DNA of 63,601 nt, filler included, from Octopus bimaculoides (lineage: Eukaryota), in NCBI RefSeq assembly GCF_001194135.2. It is 6 parts of 6 records of this genome, joined end to end, with 100 filler letters (N's around TTAATTAATTAA, not from the genome) between each part and the next. Parts side by side here need not be neighbours in the genome. Positions count along the whole stretch, not along the records: positions 46,272 to 59,013 come from NC_068984.1; 5 more parts are not named here. One strand, written 5' to 3'. Within the stretch, counting starts at the first letter, position 1. Each line of letters begins with the position of its first letter. The position numbers and the translations under genes were made by a program. The notes beneath the pieces are model-generated. The model worked only from the letters and a program-made list of their open reading frames with translations, did not search any database and was not told where the DNA came from. Of this stretch, positions 46,044 to 52,584 are shown in pieces.

Positions 46044-47254
46044 ATCTTTTCTATCTTTCAGTCTTTCTACATATTTTTCTATGTATGTATGTATGTATGT
46101 ATGTATGTATGTATGCATTTATGTATGTATGTATGTACTTATATATATATGTGTATATGTATGAATGTATANNNNNNNNNNNNNNNNNNNNNNNNNNNNN
46201 NNNNNNNNNNNNNNNTTAATTAATTAANNNNNNNNNNNNNNNNNNNNNNNNNNNNNNNNNNNNNNNNNNNNTATATATATATATATATATATATATTCAC
46301 ACACACGCGTATGTATGTATGTATGTATGTATGTATGTATGTATGTATGTATGTATGTACATGTAGTAAATGAGAGAGGATTAAGGAAACCTGGTGGCTA
46401 CGTCTGGCAGCGCATAACGAATACTAATTATCCGAGTGTATAGGGAGGCAAAAATTTCTCTAGAGTTATCATTAGTGTCTCACAATCTGAAAATCCAGAA
46501 AGCTATCTTCAGTGACCGAGCATAAATAGCAAGCGAAGATGAGAGTTGATAGAATTACATTTATTCCACGTTTTACAAGTCCTTCAGTTATGTATCAGTT
46601 GTAAATCATATAAGAGACATGAAGATATGGAATAGGGAAATGATATTGTCATATCGATTATATAATTCATATTATATAATGATTGACCTACAGTCATTTA
46701 GACATTACGCTTGTGAATAAATAAATACAGTTACTGAGTGAATGTGTATACTTATATAAGGCTATCGGGGTGACTTGTCTAGAAGTAATTAATTTGATTA
46801 AATGATTCAGGAAGGAGTTCATTTTACAAGTGTCAACGAAGAAGAAACAGATCGGCACTTTAATTGTGTTTCTTAACGGTATCATTTTACAAGTTCCATT
46901 CATTAATAAGTTCATAGACTCCAACATTTGTCAAATCTAAACGGTAGTGTATCGTAAAATTGTCTTTCTAAGGCACCGACGCCAATAAATTAATAATGAA
47001 ATGAACCGGCTCGACGGGGTCCTAATACACATACACACATATACGCACGTATATATCCACCCACGCCCACCTCCCTCCATCTATACATTACACTTCCTCC
47101 AACTCTCACTGACACACAACCTTCACTTATACATACAAACACATGCACACGTACACATCTATCATTTGTCAAACACATACGAAGGTATATACACTGGCAC
47201 TTTCATTAACACATTTAAACTTTGGGAAAATGTTTTTAGTTCGTAGTTTTGAAT

Positions 47255-47390
<136 letters not shown>

Positions 47391-48724
47391 GTTTCTCTTT
47401 CTCACTCGCTCCTTATATCTCTCCTTTCCACTCGTCGCTCAACTGCTTGACCTCACCTGCCTTTATAACCACATACCCGATTCCCTACCTGTGTATCATC
47501 TCTTCTTTCAAAAAAGAATACTTCTGTTCTTCTCTCTCTTTTTTTTTTTCTGTCAACCATTCTCCATCGTTCAAATGAGTTTCACCTTCATGTATTTCTA
47601 TAATTTTCTCGCACTTTTACCACCATCTTAAGTTTTACCACCTCGAATTTTATATCATAATCTTAACTCGTTTTAACATATCGATCTATGTTTTATTTTC
47701 GCACGCCACTAAATAAATTTCACTGTAATAATGTGTCTTTGTTTACGCACACGCACACTCTGAAATAACTCGTTCGCCGTGCACACACGTTCACCTTTCC
47801 GCAAGATTTAGTTCACACTCACACACAAAACACACACACACACACACACACACGCCCGCACACGCACACGCAATCACACAATCTCACAAACATGCCTTTG
47901 CACCACTCACTCAGCAGTTATATACACCACACCGACCAATACAACATCCACTAATCAACACCACTAAATTTATACAATTACACACATCTGTGCACATTCA
48001 TACACCTTACCAACACGCGCTTAAACCATTCCCTCTTCCAGGCACACAAACACTCTGACTCATGCAGCTATATACCTATGCCAACTCACTTCTTGTCTCC
48101 TTCATGAAACAGTATTCCGTCTTTTAGTTTTTCACCTTCCCCATGTACTCTCTCCTGATAAAATTTTTATAATACATTTTACAATTTTGCTGCTTTTAAA
48201 AGTTTATTCATTTTTTTTTTTTTTTTTTTTTTTTGCTTTGGTTTCAGACACTCTATGCTTTTCTTTCCGCCTCTTTCCTCCTTCCTGAAAAAGGACTAAT
48301 GACCCAATCGTTAAGACTCTCCATATTTATTTCAACTTCTCAAGCGTTAAAATAATAACCTGTTAGTTGTTCTTTTTTTCTTTTTGCGTTCCTAATTTTT
48401 AATGTTTTTTTTTTGCTAAATGATATACATGTGTGTGCTCTGTGAGTCCATGTGTGTCAATATGTATATATAAAATGCTACATGCATACACACAAACACA
48501 TACACACACATACATACATATACATATACACATAGAGGAGCAAACACGAAGACGGAAAGTGTCGCTGAAAAGGTCACAGATGTGTGACGAAAGATTTCCA
48601 GACAATGGAAATGAGTTAGAATAAAAATAGTGCTAAACGAGTGGAGAACGAATGTATAGTGCGTGTGTTTATTTGGCAAAAACAAAATAAAAAGATCATC
48701 CCGAAATACAATATATACATATAT

Positions 48725-48938
48725 ATATTCTTTTATTCTTTTATTTGTTTCACTCATTTGACTGCGATCATGCTGGAGCACCGCCTTGAGTCGAACAAAT
48801 CGCCCCAAGGACTTATTCTTTGTAAGTCTAGTACTTATCCTATCGGTTTCCCCGTCGAACCGCTAAGTTACACGGACGTAGACACACCAGCATTGGTGAT
48901 CAAGCGATGATTGGGGGACAGACACGCGCGCACGCACG

Positions 48939-48976
<38 letters not shown>

Positions 48977-49137
48977 CGACGGCTTCTTTCATTCTCCGCC
49001 GACCAAATTCACTCATAATGCTTTGGTCAGCCCGAGGCTATAGTAGAAGACACCTGCCCAAGATGCCACGCAGTGGGAATGAACCCAAAACCATGTGGTT
49101 GGTAAGCAAGCTACTTACCATACAGCCATGCCTGCGC
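48725..49137 (-). mobile_element. SINE family A, full length
   Basis: Reverse complement of the reference copy; its head abuts the mariner TA at 49141-49144. Confidence 0.92.
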
Positions 49138-49144
49138 CAATATA

Positions 49145-49523
49145 TTCGGTTGTCAAGAAAGTTCTTGCGGAATTTTAAAGTTTGGTTTTAAATGATGTAT
49201 TTTCGAATTAATTTTCGTTAAATTACTTTGACTTTATATACTATTTTAAAGCCCGCTTTTCGCTCTATCGAATCGTGTTACTCTTTTTCTTTTTGAATTA
49301 TTAGACCATTTTTTCCGGAACGTTGAATACAACATGGACAAAAGCAAATTCGCACAATTTTTTTATTCCAGTTCAAGCTAGGACGAAAAGCTGCTGAAAC
49401 AGCTCGCGATATCAACGATGCGTTTGGCCCAGAAACCACTAATGAACGTACAGCACAATGGTGGTTCAAGAAATTGCGTAGCGGTGACGAGAGTCTTGAA
49501 GATGATAAGCATAGTGGTTGACA
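49145..49523 (+). mobile_element. Hsmar1-like (cecropia-type) mariner, 5' fragment
   Basis: TA|ttcggttgtcaagaaagttcttgcgga TIR; with one base restored, ATG 49334 gives MDKKQIRTIFLFQFKLGRKAAETARDINDAFGPETTNERTAQWWFKKLRSGDESLEDDKHSG*. Confidence 0.9.
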
Positions 49524-49714
49524 ACGATCAACTAAGAACCCATGGTATAAACTCAGGTGGAGAAGCCTGGGGTGAAATTCCTGCAGTATTTAGTTATGGT
49601 CTTTTTACTTGCTGAATTCAAATCCCGCCAAGATCGACTTTCGTCTATAAATCTCAGCTGATCTATAAGTATCTGGTTTACAAAAATCCTATACGAATAA
49701 CACTCATCAGCTGG

Positions 49715-50973
49715 ATTGCAAACATCATCTGGAATATGTGGAATAGAAGCAGTATCTGGAATATGTGGAATAGAAGCAGTATCTGGAATAGGAAAATATT
49801 TCGATATAAACACTATCTGAACTATAAATGTCATCTAGACTATAAACATCATTACGAAACAGCTATTTTACAAACACCGTATTGTCAGTAAACAGCATCT
49901 AGAATATTAAAAGCTTCTCGAATATGAACACCATCTGAGCTATAAACATCATCTAGATAATAAACTAAAACACAAACATCATCTCGAATATAAACACCTA
50001 CTGAAATATAAACACCATCTAGATTATAAACACCAACGGAATATAAACACCTTCTCGGATATAAACACCATCTGAACTATAGGCATCATATGGGCTATAA
50101 ACGTCAACTGAACTATAAACATCATTTGGAATATAAACAGCTCCTGAAATATAAATACCATCTAGTTTATAGGCACCAGCTGGTCTGTAAACATCAACCG
50201 GAATGTAAACAGCTCGAATATAAACACCATCTGAGCTATAGGCATCATATGGGCTATAAACGTCAACTGAACTATAAACATCATTTGGAATATAAACAGC
50301 TCCTGAANNNNNNNNNNNNNNNNNNNNNNNNNNNNNNNNNNNNNNNNNNNNNNNNNNNNNNNNNNNNNNNNNNNNNNNNNNNNNNNNNNNNNNNNNNNNN
50401 NNNNNNNNNNNNNNNNNNNNNNNNNNNNNNNNNNNNNNNNNNNNNNNNNNNNNNNNNNNNNACTATAGGCATCATATGGGCTATAAACGTCAACTGAACT
50501 ATAAACATCATTTGGAATATAAACAGCTCCTGAAATATAAATACCATCTAGTTTATAGGCACCAGCTGGTCTGTAAACATCAACTGGAATGTAAACAGCT
50601 CGAATATAAACACCATCTGAGCTATAGGCATCATATGGACTATAAACGTCAACTGAACTATAAACATCATTTGGAATATAAACAGCTCCTGAAATTTAAA
50701 CACCATCTAGATTATAAGTACCAGCTAGTCTGTAAATATCAACTGGAATATAAACATTTAGACAATAAGCAATGTCTGGATATATACATAATCTGAATTT
50801 GAAACACCATCTGGACAATAAAAACCCTTCGGGGATAGAAACATAATCTGAGCTATAAACTGTATCTGCACTGTACTAACACAATCTGAACGATGAACAC
50901 TGTCTGGGCTGTATAAACATCACCGTAAACATTACCTAGACTATAAACACTATCTGGAATATATAAGCACCAT
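49715..50973 (+). repeat. 18-bp minisatellite with 159-bp higher-order repeat; reads as (Y-K-H-H-L-x)n
   Basis: Unit ~tataaacaccatctggaa; HOR copies start at ~50078, 50237, 50463 and 50622; degenerate continuation at 51508-51660. Confidence 0.92.
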
Positions 50974-51500
50974 TCGAGAGAGGCAGATCCCTAGTCTGGA
51001 ACGCGGCGTGCAGTGACACGTTTTCCAGTTACAACCTTGCAGCATCGGCTGCAAACCGGGTNNNNNNNNNNCAACCTTGCAGCATCGGCTGCAAACCGGG
51101 TGTCGTCGCCCGTAATGCAAAAGAGAGGAAAATAAATAAACAGAAGAGCCTCGCCAGCTGCTATCAGTTTGTGCTGGTCGCCGTCGAGACGTCAGGTATT
51201 CTCGGACTCTGCACTGCTGATTTCCTCCGTAAAATTAGGAAAATAGCTGCCTGTCGGAGAAATGAGTCTCGCGAGGTGGAGTGAATGCTGCAGCTAGTGT
51301 CGCTGTCCATTCTCCGGGGCAACGCCATCGCAGTGATGACCACAGGTCGCGGCGGACCATACCATTTGTTCAGGGGTGAGTTCCCCTCCATCTTAAGCCC
51401 TCTTTTTTCTTTCCCTGTTTTTCTTTTATTTTTCTGTTTCTTTGCTTCTTTGCATTTAAATGTTATAATTAACAATGTCATCAGTTGGTTTAAAATAAGA
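50970..51500 (+). mobile_element. 5'-truncated CRE-like non-LTR retrotransposon (RLE domain plus 3' UTR)
   Basis: PFERGRSLVWNAACSDTFSSYNLAASAA / PGVVARNAKERKINKQKSLASCYQFVLVAVETSGILGLCTADFLRKIRKIAACRRNESREVE*MLQLVSLSILRGNAIAVMTT follows the CRE-type RLE pattern (G.slvWDatc.dt...K..KY...f.p.avEt.G..g...Q.ls.ai.rGNa). Confidence 0.8.
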
Positions 51501-51989
51501 GTATCGCTATATTCTACAACTGGAATACATACATCATCTTGACTATAAACACGAATTGGCCTGAATAAACACAGTTTGGGTTATTAACACCATCTCGACA
51601 GTAAGCACCTCAAAACATCGAATCTGCTATAAATACCAATTGGACTATAAACAGCAATATGAGAGAATGGCAACCAAATGTGGGAGAGTGTCAATTATAT
51701 TCCGGAACAAGCACTTACAGTTGTTCTCAGTAACAATTTCCCATCTCTTCCCCCGCTCCAATCTTATTTACATTGACCTCATAATTACTAAATGTTCTTA
51801 TTGTTAAGTCGACTAACCTAATTAAACAGTCACAGCCACATAGAAACATTTCCTTCATCAGCTGCCACCATTAAAACACCGGCGTTTCGAAGAATTAAGG
51901 CAGTACACATCGTTGAAATGATGTATATATACATATATATGTATATAGATATGTCGTGACCAAACAGTCGTGAGTGTATATATATATAT

Positions 51990-52026
<37 letters not shown>

Positions 52027-52399
52027 NNNNNNNNNNNNNNNNNNNNNNNNNNNNNNNNNNNNNNNNNNNNNNNNNNNNNNNNNNNNNNNNNNNNNNNNNN
52101 NNNNNNNNNNNNNNNNNNNNNNNNNNNNNNNNNNNNNNNNNNNNNNNNNNNNNNNNNNNNNNNNNNNNNNNNNNNNNNNNNNNNNNNNNNNNNNNNNNNN
52201 NNNNNNNNNNNNNNNNNNNNNNNNNNNNNNNNNNNNNNNNNNNNNNNNNNNNNNNNNNNNNNNNNNNNNNNNNNNNNNNNNNNNNNNNNNNNNNNNNNNN
52301 NNNNNNNNNNNNNNNNNNNNNNNNNNNNNNNNNNNNNNNNNNNNNNNNNNNNNNNNNNNNNNNNNNNNNNNNNNNNNNNNNNNNNNNNNNTATATATAT

Positions 52400-52503
52400 A
52401 CATACATATATACGACGAGCTTCTTTCAGTTTCCATCTACCAAATCCAGTCACAAGCCTTTGGTCGGCCCGAGGCTAGAGTAGAAGACACTTGCCCAAGG
52501 TAC
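52400..52503 (-). mobile_element. SINE family A fragment; head truncated by the Penelope-like element
   Basis: ttctttcagtttccatctaccaaatcc...agaagacacttgcccaagg, then abrupt loss of homology. Confidence 0.85.
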
Positions 52504-52521
52504 CACTGGTAAAGGCCTGTT

Positions 52522-52584
52522 TATAGGGTTAACTTGGGTTTCTCGCCATAAAGAGTATATTTATGGCGTATCATCAGACCCATA
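52522..52584 (-). ncRNA. Type I hammerhead ribozyme motif (PLE-associated, slightly degenerate)
   Basis: 5'-UAUGGGU CUGAUGA UA CGCCAUAAA uauacuc UUUAUGGCG A GAAA CCCAAGUUA ACCCUAUA-3': core CUGAUGA...GAAA, 9-bp stem II, stem I UAUGGGU/ACCC(U)AUA. Confidence 0.65.

What the first reader, a model, noticed from the sequence alone, without database searches (positions are those of the whole stretch)
52522..52584. Hammerhead ribozyme in the inverted pLTR
Seen: intact CUGAUGA and GAAA cores, a 9-bp stem II closed by a 7-nt loop, stem I UAUGGGU/ACCC(U)AUA and a 2-bp stem III (AC-ccaa-GU). It is in the sense orientation of the pLTR. Imperfections: no canonical G10.1-C11.1 pair and an ambiguous cleavage register (GUU versus UUA). 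Established: PLE pLTRs encode type I hammerheads. Inference: the parent family processes its RNA by self-cleavage; this copy may be impaired.
Basis: partly seen in the sequence, partly recalled or inferred. Interest (0 to 1): 0.85.

Follow-up and report, generated by a model that had tools for sequence, protein, structure and literature searches.

The report
Decayed solitary Penelope-type hammerhead ribozyme relic
A 63-base stretch on the minus strand really does have the layout of the small hammerhead ribozymes carried by Penelope-like retrotransposons, but it is a single mutated copy with no such retrotransposon shown around it, so it is an ordinary transposon relic.

Summary
The motif is real. 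None of 1500 dinucleotide shuffles of the 11.6 kb piece gave a hit with a helix II of 9 bp or more, and only 1 gave 7 bp or more.

[quoted passage not shown] It lacks the conserved G10.1-C11.1 pair, and loop 3 is not palindromic. No Rfam hammerhead model matches it, even at E<=10. Predicted folding puts it about 99% in a non-hammerhead rod.

The "inverted pLTR" (Penelope pseudo-LTR) context is not shown. The motif lies 65 nt outside the demonstrable inverted repeat (52649-52833 / 53804-53983, 87% identical). The partner arm is cut off before the place where a second hammerhead would sit. Six-frame Pfam scans of 50462-56290 found no reverse transcriptase or GIY-YIG endonuclease.

Neighbours are a truncated Tc1 transposon and a truncated SINE, both with relatives in Octopus sinensis. 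No other copy of the element could be retrieved.

Verdict: a known kind of element, probably inactive here, of low interest.

The parts
52522..52584 (-). Hammerhead-shaped motif, type I topology (helix I open; helices II and III closed by loops).
   Evidence: Direct reading; descriptor hit; 0 of 1500 shuffles as good.
52571..52577 (-). Core box C3-A9 (CUGAUGA), followed by two unpaired bases UA at 52570-52569.
   Evidence: An extra base between A9 and 10.1 is a hallmark of PLE minimal hammerheads (PMC4209133).
52544..52568 (-). Helix II: a perfect 9 bp stem (CGCCAUAAA/UUUAUGGCG) with the 7-nt loop UAUACUC. An AUG lies in its 3' strand.
   Evidence: This hairpin forms in every predicted structure.
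52539..52543 (-). A at position 11.1 (52543), then G12 A13 A14 A15.1 (GAAA). With A or U at 10.1 this leaves no G10.1-C11.1 pair.
52530..52539 (-). Helix III and loop 3 (A-C-CCAA-G-U) plus the cleavage triplet. The predicted cut is after U52531 (GUU register) or after A52530 (UUA register). ACCCAAGU self-pairs at only 4 of 8 positions.
52522..52529 (-). Helix I 3' strand ACCC(U)AUA. It pairs with UAUGGGU (52578-52584) as 4 contiguous bp plus 3 bp beyond a bulged U.
52585..52648 (-). 64-nt spacer between the left inverted-repeat arm and the motif. It matches nothing else in the piece.
   Evidence: It is not significantly similar to the Tc1 ends.
52649..52833 (-). Left arm of the inverted repeat.
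   Evidence: 158 of 182 aligned positions are identical, with one 5-nt indel; JC distance 0.145.
52834..53803 (.). 970-nt non-repeated centre, largely low-complexity (CAA/CAG/CAC-rich). It holds a 220-aa ORF on the minus strand with no Pfam match.
53804..53983 (+). Right arm of the inverted repeat. It is truncated at its outer end, at least 127 nt short of where a partner hammerhead would lie.
53984..54858 (-). Degenerate Tc1-family transposon that abuts the right arm. It lacks its last ~60 nt, including the 3' terminal inverted repeat (TIR).
   Evidence: Pfam DDE_3 and HTH_Tnp_Tc3_2. 88-94% DNA identity to L004, L005 and Octopus sinensis L006.
52414..52508 (-). 5'-truncated tRNA-derived SINE. 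It begins 13 nt downstream of the motif on the same strand.
   Evidence: Alignment to the full copy at 49145-48700; hits in O. sinensis L006.

Best explanation
This is a solitary, mutated relic of a minimal type I hammerhead ribozyme. PLEs and their non-autonomous derivatives carry this kind of ribozyme near the 3' end of each unit, at the pLTR/ORF junction.

How the parent family is thought to work (from the literature, not shown here):
- Read-through or multimeric transcripts carry the motif.
- Because helix III is almost absent, two copies pair through helix III, or the element's own protein helps folding.
- The RNA then cuts itself after position 17, leaving a 2',3'-cyclic phosphate and a 5'-OH.

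At this locus the copy is most likely dead or nearly so (inferred):
- It has no G10.1-C11.1 pair.
- It has an extra base in the helix I/cleavage-site register.
- Its loop 3 is non-palindromic and cannot support the dimer.
- The helix I strand is predicted to pair elsewhere.

It sits at the outer end of one arm of a head-to-head inverted duplication. PLE insertions often make that geometry, but nothing here shows that the arms are pLTRs.
For: Motif and significance:
- All 11 invariant core bases, the U-H cleavage site and three helices in type I order are present.
- 0 of 1500 shuffles were as good, and there was no comparable hit in 34 kb of real sequence.

Fit to the PLE minimal hammerhead described in PMC4209133:
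- Helix II is longer than usual (9 bp here, 6-8 bp there).
- There are unpaired bases between A9 and helix II.
- Helix I is 4-5 bp and open.
- Helix III is 1-2 bp.
- Most genomic copies are solitary, or occur in opposite-strand pairs 100-700 bp apart.

Decay:
- The arms differ by JC 0.145. If they arose together, that is about 0.07 per site per arm, or 4-5 changes expected in 63 nt. This matches the number of flaws seen.

Geometry:
- The motif's sense points outward from the inverted duplication. PLEs form inverted 5'-truncated copies, and their hammerhead lies just upstream of the unit's 3' end (PMC8557442; PMC11167929).

Host:
- The flanking Tc1 and SINE have relatives in Octopus sinensis. 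Octopus genomes carry many Penelope families (PMC13282606).
Against: - No Rfam hammerhead model matches, even at E<=10 on 85 nt.
- The highly conserved G10.1-C11.1 pair is absent, and loop 3 is not palindromic.
- The predicted ensemble gives helix I about 0.4% occupancy and a competing rod about 99% (-18.3 kcal/mol against -8 to -12.6 for hammerhead folds).
- No RT or GIY-YIG domain was found within 2 kb on either side, or in the ten best open stretches elsewhere in the piece.
- The motif lies outside the demonstrable repeat, and no second copy exists in the piece.
Confidence: 0.62

Rival explanations
1. The two arms are pLTRs of a PLE insertion (an inverted 5'-truncated copy beside a second copy). 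The hammerhead belongs to the left pLTR, and the right arm once had its own.
For: - The arms are head-to-head with the hammerhead pointing outward, the geometry described for PLEs.
- Opposite-strand hammerhead pairs 100-700 bp apart are reported.
- The right arm and the Tc1 copy are both truncated at one junction. A single deletion that removed the right hammerhead would explain this.
Against: - The 970-nt centre should contain the 3' part of a PLE ORF, but it has no RVT or GIY-YIG signal and is largely low-complexity.
- Homology between the arms stops 65 nt short of the motif, so shared ancestry of the hammerhead segment is not shown.
Confidence: 0.3
2. The inverted repeat 52647-53986 is a separate TIR-type or foldback element. 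The hammerhead merely lies in its flank, as part of an older ~90-nt fragment.
For: - ATGG(G) occurs at both outer edges (52643-52647 and 53987-53991), a possible 4-5 bp target-site duplication.
- The arms end symmetrically.
- The centre has no retroelement coding capacity.
Against: - A 4-5 bp match after trying several boundaries has roughly a 2% chance, which is weak evidence.
- If the element had inserted into the Tc1 copy, the left flank should be the missing ~60 nt of Tc1. It is not recognisable as such: alignment p is about 0.1, and 53 of 232 control segments score as well. The rest of that Tc1 copy is ~90% identical to its family.
Confidence: 0.25
3. The motif comes from a different hammerhead carrier. 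One option is a monomer of a non-LTR retrozyme. Another is a SINE-like element or RT template-switch chimera in which the hammerhead segment is fused to the SINE body.
For: - The motif is followed after 13 nt by a 5'-truncated SINE on the same strand, where the tRNA-like head would be.
- Helix III of 2 bp with a tetraloop is the usual form in invertebrate retrozyme hammerheads.
- SINE-like hammerhead carriers exist in schistosomes.
Against: - There is no tandem repeat of 170-400 bp around it.
- Helix II of 9 bp and the extra bases after A9 are PLE traits, not those of canonical retrozyme hammerheads with a 4-bp helix II.
- A type I hammerhead upstream of a SINE body would be cut away from it and so would not be copied with it (inference).
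Confidence: 0.1
4. Chance. An ordinary imperfect 20-bp palindromic hairpin happens to contain CUGAUGA and GAAA.
For: - The predicted minimum-energy fold is a rod, not a hammerhead.
- There is no Rfam hit.
- A second descriptor hit in the same piece is clearly spurious.
Against: - 0 of 1500 shuffles were as good.
- Both core boxes sit directly against a perfect 9-bp hairpin, in the right order.
- A U-H site and a complementary helix I strand are also present at the right distance.
Confidence: 0.08

Closest known systems
Minimal type I hammerheads of metazoan Penelope-like elements (Cervera & De la Pena 2014, PMC4209133)
   Same: - Type I topology.
- Intact CUGAUGA/GAAA/UH core.
- Unusually long helix II.
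- Unpaired base(s) between A9 and helix II.
- Short open helix I.
- Helix III of 1-2 bp.
- Occurs as a solitary genomic copy.
   Different: - A/U at 10.1 and A at 11.1 in place of the highly conserved G-C pair.
- Two extra bases after A9 rather than one.
- Loop 3 (CCAA) is not palindromic.
- No pLTR or PLE ORF is shown next to it.
Hammerhead of the Poseidon element PAc of Anolis carolinensis (PMC11167929)
   Same: - Lacks a proper helix III.
- Lies at the 3' end of the repeat unit.
- A start codon overlaps helix II. Here an AUG lies in the 3' strand of helix II, 19-20 nt before the cut site; in PAc the cut is 26 nt after the start codon.
   Different: - PAc is part of an intact, expressed pLTR-ORF-pLTR unit, and its cleavage was shown to be protein-assisted.
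- Here the reading frame closes after 6 codons, no ORF follows, and nothing was tested.
Type I hammerheads of metazoan non-LTR retrozymes (Cervera & De la Pena 2020, PMC7229834; Li et al. 2026 preprint, 10.64898/2026.07.22.740005)
   Same: - Type I topology.
- 2-bp helix III with a tetraloop.
- Non-coding carrier, probably derived from PLE pLTRs.
   Different: - Retrozymes are tandem repeats of roughly 170-400 bp, each with a hammerhead that has a 4-bp helix II and loop-loop contacts.
- This is a single copy with a 9-bp helix II and no tandem array.
Rfam hammerhead models (Hammerhead_1 RF00163 and the other hammerhead families of release 15)
   Same: Same catalytic core and three-helix junction.
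   Different: None of these models scores the sequence, even at E<=10. The likely reasons are the long helix II, the extra bases next to it and the near-absent helix III. That explanation is an inference and was not tested on bona fide PLE hammerheads.

Membership tests
Hammerhead ribozyme (general) | Conserved core C3 U4 G5 A6 N7 G8 A9 ... G12 A13 A14 A15.1 ... U16.1 H17 | tested here: met
   CUGAUGA at 52577-52571, GAAA at 52542-52539, and UU/UA at 52532-52530.
Hammerhead ribozyme (general) | Three helices around the core, in type I order (helix I open) | tested here: met
   Helix II is 9 bp, helix III is 1-2 bp, and helix I is 4+3 bp with a bulge. The nearest-neighbour ensemble, however, favours a different fold.
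Hammerhead ribozyme (general) | Self-cleavage after position 17 | not testable with these tools
   Needs in vitro transcription or end mapping.
Rfam hammerhead families (release 15) | Covariance-model score at or above gathering score | tested here: not met
   No hammerhead hit at gathering score or at E<=10, even on 85 nt.
PLE minimal hammerhead (PMC4209133) | Long helix II (6-8 bp) with an unpaired base between A9 and 10.1 | tested here: met
   9-bp helix II preceded by unpaired U (and A).
PLE minimal hammerhead (PMC4209133) | Highly conserved G10.1-C11.1 pair | tested here: not met
   The bases flanking helix II are U-A on the 5' side and A on the 3' side. This allows at best a U-A pair with a bulged A, or an A.A mismatch.
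PLE minimal hammerhead (PMC4209133) | Palindromic 15.2-16.2 and loop 3, which allow dimer formation | tested here: inconclusive
   C15.2-G16.2 is complementary, but loop CCAA is not palindromic. ACCCAAGU self-pairs at 4 of 8 positions, and the predicted dimer does not use helix III.
PLE minimal hammerhead (PMC4209133) | Located in the pLTR of an element encoding RT plus GIY-YIG endonuclease | tested here: not met
   No RVT or GIY-YIG domain in six-frame scans of 50462-56290 or in the ten best open stretches elsewhere. This holds for this locus only. Solitary copies from truncated PLEs are the commonest form reported.
PLE minimal hammerhead (PMC4209133) | Belongs to a genomic family of copies with compensatory changes in the helices | not testable with these tools
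   There is no other copy in the piece. The protein, metagenome and exact-ORF look-ups found none, and no eukaryotic DNA collection was searchable.
Metazoan non-LTR retrozyme | Tandem repeats of ~170-400 bp, each with a type I hammerhead | tested here: not met
   No direct repeat of the segment was found.

The most novel reading that the evidence does not exclude
The hammerhead + 13 nt + SINE-body arrangement may not be an accident of two insertions. It could be one unit, of either of two kinds. One is a cephalopod SINE subfamily, or retrozyme-like element, in which a PLE-type hammerhead replaces the tRNA-like head. The other is an RT template-switch chimera that records a discrete hammerhead-containing RNA. 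Under this reading, the variant without G10.1-C11.1 and with a stable alternative rod would be the family's normal, protein-assisted or switchable form.
Probability: 0.06. Interest if true: 0.5.

Novelty: new member of a known kind. Interest (0 to 1): 0.14.

Why it matters
It matters little on its own. Thousands of such solitary PLE-type hammerheads are reported per invertebrate genome, and this one looks dead.

It has two small uses:
- It marks PLE-derived sequence in an octopus-type genome.
- It is a concrete case that all current Rfam hammerhead models miss. A dedicated model for PLE-type minimal hammerheads would therefore improve annotation.

Tried and rejected
- **Rfam.** Searched at gathering score and at E<=10 on 12.7 kb, 409 nt and 85 nt. 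No hammerhead was reported; the only hit was a chance hairpin match to AS-pc01.
- **Other copies via proteins.** A six-frame translation of 52508-52840 was used as one protein query. It drew 3638 word-sharing candidates, none significant.
- **Exact ORF look-up.** The 220-aa ORF in the centre is not on record.
- **Metagenome scan.** The pattern CTGATGANNCGCCATN{8,20}ATGGCGNGAAA gave three unrelated chance matches, L001-L003.
- **Nearby retroelement-like ORF.** The ORF at 50967-51539 was used as a possible PLE lead. It has no homologues and no Pfam match.
- **Hypothesis that the 52508-52648 flank is the 3' end or TIR of the adjacent Tc1.** This would have placed the hammerhead beside or inside a DNA transposon. 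It was rejected for three reasons:
  - There is no significant similarity to this copy's 5' TIR (107 of 1000 shuffles scored as well).
  - There is no significant similarity to the family's 3' end taken from L004-L006 (p about 0.1, and 53 of 232 control segments scored as well).
  - The rest of the Tc1 copy is ~90% identical to its family.
- **Second degenerate hammerhead in the arms.** The word CUGAUGA at 53874-53880 has no GAAA or helix context.
- **tRNA search.** ARAGORN found none.
- **Supplementary sequence files of the key PLE papers.** None are held, and Lunse et al. 2017 is not held.

Full report
**Observation**

The reverse complement of 52522-52584 reads UAUGGGU CUGAUGA UA CGCCAUAAA UAUACUC UUUAUGGCG A GAAA C CCAA G UU A ACCCUAUA.
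- both core boxes;
- a perfect 9-bp helix II with a 7-nt loop;
- a helix I of 4 contiguous pairs plus 3 more beyond a bulged U;
- a 2-bp helix III closed by CCAA.

The bases next to helix II are U-A on one side and A on the other, so there is no G10.1-C11.1 pair. An extra A leaves two possible registers:
- GUU, cut after 52531, with a 2-bp helix III and two bulges in helix I;
- UUA, cut after 52530, with a 1-bp helix III and one bulge.

**Is it more than chance?**

I wrote a deliberately relaxed hammerhead descriptor: CUGAUGA, 0-2 spare bases, helix II of at least 3 bp, 0-1 spare base, GAAA, a U-H site within 45 nt, and helix I of at least 4 bp. In the piece it finds this site and one clearly spurious site with a 3-bp helix II.

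In 1500 dinucleotide-preserving shuffles of the 11.6 kb of real sequence:
- 38 gave any hit;
- 6 had helix II of at least 5 bp;
- 1 had at least 7 bp;
- none had 9 bp.

No hit with helix II of at least 4 bp occurs in another 23 kb of octopus-type DNA fetched later. I therefore take the motif as hammerhead-derived rather than accidental.

Against that, Rfam release 15 reports no hammerhead family at gathering score, at E<=10 on 409 nt, or at E<=10 on 85 nt. I could not score bona fide PLE hammerheads with the same models. My explanation for the miss (long helix II, extra bases, near-absent helix III) is therefore an inference.

**What kind of hammerhead**

Cervera & De la Pena 2014 (PMC4209133) describe the minimal hammerheads of metazoan PLEs with these traits:
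- helix II larger than usual (6-8 bp);
- an unpaired base at the 5' end of helix II;
- a highly conserved G10.1-C11.1 pair;
- a minimal, palindromic helix III;
- low activity in vitro, and then only as dimers.

They also report that most genomic copies are solitary, and that some occur as opposite-strand pairs 100-700 bp apart. The present motif meets the first three traits and the small helix III. It fails G10.1-C11.1, and its loop 3 (CCAA) is not palindromic. Canonical retrozyme hammerheads differ in having a 4-bp helix II and loop-loop contacts.

**Folding**

- The minimum-energy fold of the 78-nt RNA is not a hammerhead. It is a 20-bp interrupted rod of -18.3 kcal/mol (z = -2.7 against shuffles).
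- In that rod the GGG of helix I pairs with the CCC inside the helix III segment, and U2.1-C3-U4 pairs with A11.1-G12-A13.
- Hammerhead-compatible structures score -8 to -12.6 kcal/mol.
- In the ensemble the helix I pairs have about 0.4% probability and the competing pairs about 99%.
- The predicted homodimer is a domain-swapped rod, not a helix III dimer, and ACCCAAGU self-pairs at only 4 of 8 positions.

Nearest-neighbour models ignore the tertiary core. Even so, together with the missing G-C pair, this argues that the copy is inactive or very weak.

**Context**

- **Inverted repeat.** An inverted repeat exists, but it covers only 52649-52833 and 53804-53983. 158 of 182 aligned positions are identical, with one 5-nt indel and a JC distance of 0.145.
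- **Position of the motif.** It lies 65 nt beyond the outer end of the left arm, with its sense pointing outward.
- **Right arm and Tc1.** The right arm stops at 53983, at least 127 nt short of where a partner motif would be. At exactly that point a Tc1-family transposon begins.
- **Tc1 family.** The Tc1 copy is 88-94% identical at the DNA level to two ENA contigs and to a locus on Octopus sinensis chromosome CM016861.1. Those relatives show that the window copy lacks its last ~60 nt, including the 3' terminal inverted repeat (TIR).
- **Centre.** The 970 nt between the arms are largely CAA/CAG/CAC-rich low complexity. The 220-aa ORF there has no Pfam match.
- **SINE.** Thirteen nucleotides downstream of the motif, on the same strand, a 5'-truncated tRNA-derived SINE begins. 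It has relatives in the O. sinensis locus. It then runs into (TA)n and a 364-N gap.
- **No PLE coding sequence.** Six-frame Pfam scans of 52391-54518, 50462-52026 and 54859-56290, plus the ten most complex open stretches elsewhere, gave only DDE_3, HTH_Tnp_Tc3_2 and HTH_48. No reverse transcriptase or GIY-YIG endonuclease was found. The 46272-50307 and 56906-59013 stretches were not scanned in all six frames.

A PLE is therefore not shown at this locus, and neither is membership of the motif in the repeated arms.

**What the context allows**

PLE insertions typically include an inverted 5'-truncated copy, and their hammerhead lies close to the 3' end of the unit. In Poseidon PAc it overlaps the ORF start, just upstream of the internal reverse-transcription start. 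Head-to-head arms with an outward-pointing hammerhead fit that picture.

One deletion spanning the right arm's outer end and the Tc1 3' end would explain the missing partner. If the arms arose together, each has accumulated about 0.07 changes per site. That predicts 4-5 changes in a 63-nt motif, which is about the number of departures from the published consensus. This is inference.

An alternative is that 52647-53986 is a separate TIR-type insertion, since ATGG(G) occurs at both edges, with the motif merely in its flank. I tested the obvious corollary, that the flank would then be the missing Tc1 3' end. I could not support it. Alignment to the family's 3' end and to this copy's own TIR is no better than shuffles or control segments, although the rest of the Tc1 copy is ~90% identical to the family.

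**Search for relatives**

No collection of eukaryotic DNA could be searched. The following found nothing related:
- a six-frame protein query of the arm plus motif;
- an exact look-up of the central ORF;
- a metagenome pattern scan;
- a query with a nearby retroelement-like ORF.

Consensus, covariation and linkage to a PLE ORF therefore remain untested.

**How it most likely works**

For the parent family, from the literature:
- The motif is transcribed within multimeric or read-through RNA.
- It folds as a dimer or with help from the element's protein, and cuts after position 17.
- In PAc the cleavage needs the protein and is not required for insertion in vitro, so its role is still open.

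For this copy, by inference, there is no activity and no function. It is a neutral relic roughly as old as the arm divergence.

**Verdict**

This is a new but degenerate instance of a well-known kind, and its interest is low.

Noticed in passing
53984-54858 (minus strand): Degenerate Tc1-family transposon. Its 5' TIR ends at ~54858, and it has an internal deletion of ~100 aa, frameshifts and an N10 gap. It lacks the last ~60 nt, including the 3' TIR. The same family occurs at 88-94% DNA identity in two ENA contigs and in Octopus sinensis CM016861.1, which points to an octopus-like source genome.
   Followed up: yes
48700-49145 (minus strand) and 52414-52508 (minus strand): A tRNA-derived SINE with an internal (TA)n(CA)n tract: one full copy and one 5'-truncated copy. 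ARAGORN does not call the head as a tRNA. Related copies (73-84% identity) occur in the O. sinensis locus L006.
   Followed up: partly
52515-52592 (minus strand): The hammerhead region is predicted to fold almost entirely (~99%) into a 20-bp interrupted rod. In it, the helix I strand pairs with the helix III segment. One copy cannot show whether this is decay or a built-in inactive conformer.
   Followed up: partly
52643-52647 and 53987-53991: ATGG(G) occurs at both outer edges of the inverted repeat. It could be a 4-5 bp target-site duplication or microhomology at a deletion junction. The right arm and the Tc1 copy are both truncated at this same junction.
   Followed up: partly
49805-50843: Degenerate satellite with an 18-nt period and higher-order units of 72, 143 and 159 nt. 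It is interrupted by a 154-N gap.
   Followed up: partly
50960-51480 (plus strand): 3' fragment of an unidentified retroelement-like sequence, with an ORF (...YQFVLVAVETSGILG...LSILRGNAIAV...). It has no Pfam match and no homologues in the protein collection. A 30-nt stretch is duplicated on either side of the N10 gap at 51062-51071, which looks like an assembly artefact.
   Followed up: partly
49327-49518 (plus strand): Fragment of a Mos1-type mariner transposase (Pfam HTH_48, E = 8e-17).
   Followed up: no
53050-53500: CAA/CAG/CAC-rich low-complexity tract in the centre of the inverted repeat. It is open in several frames, including a 220-aa ORF on the minus strand and a 155-aa Thr/Ala/Pro-rich ORF on the plus strand. 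Its origin is unknown.
   Followed up: no
52544-52552 (minus strand): An AUG lies in the 3' strand of helix II, 19-20 nt before the predicted cut. This recalls Poseidon PAc, whose ORF starts at helix II. Here the frame closes after 6 codons (MARNPS*).
   Followed up: no
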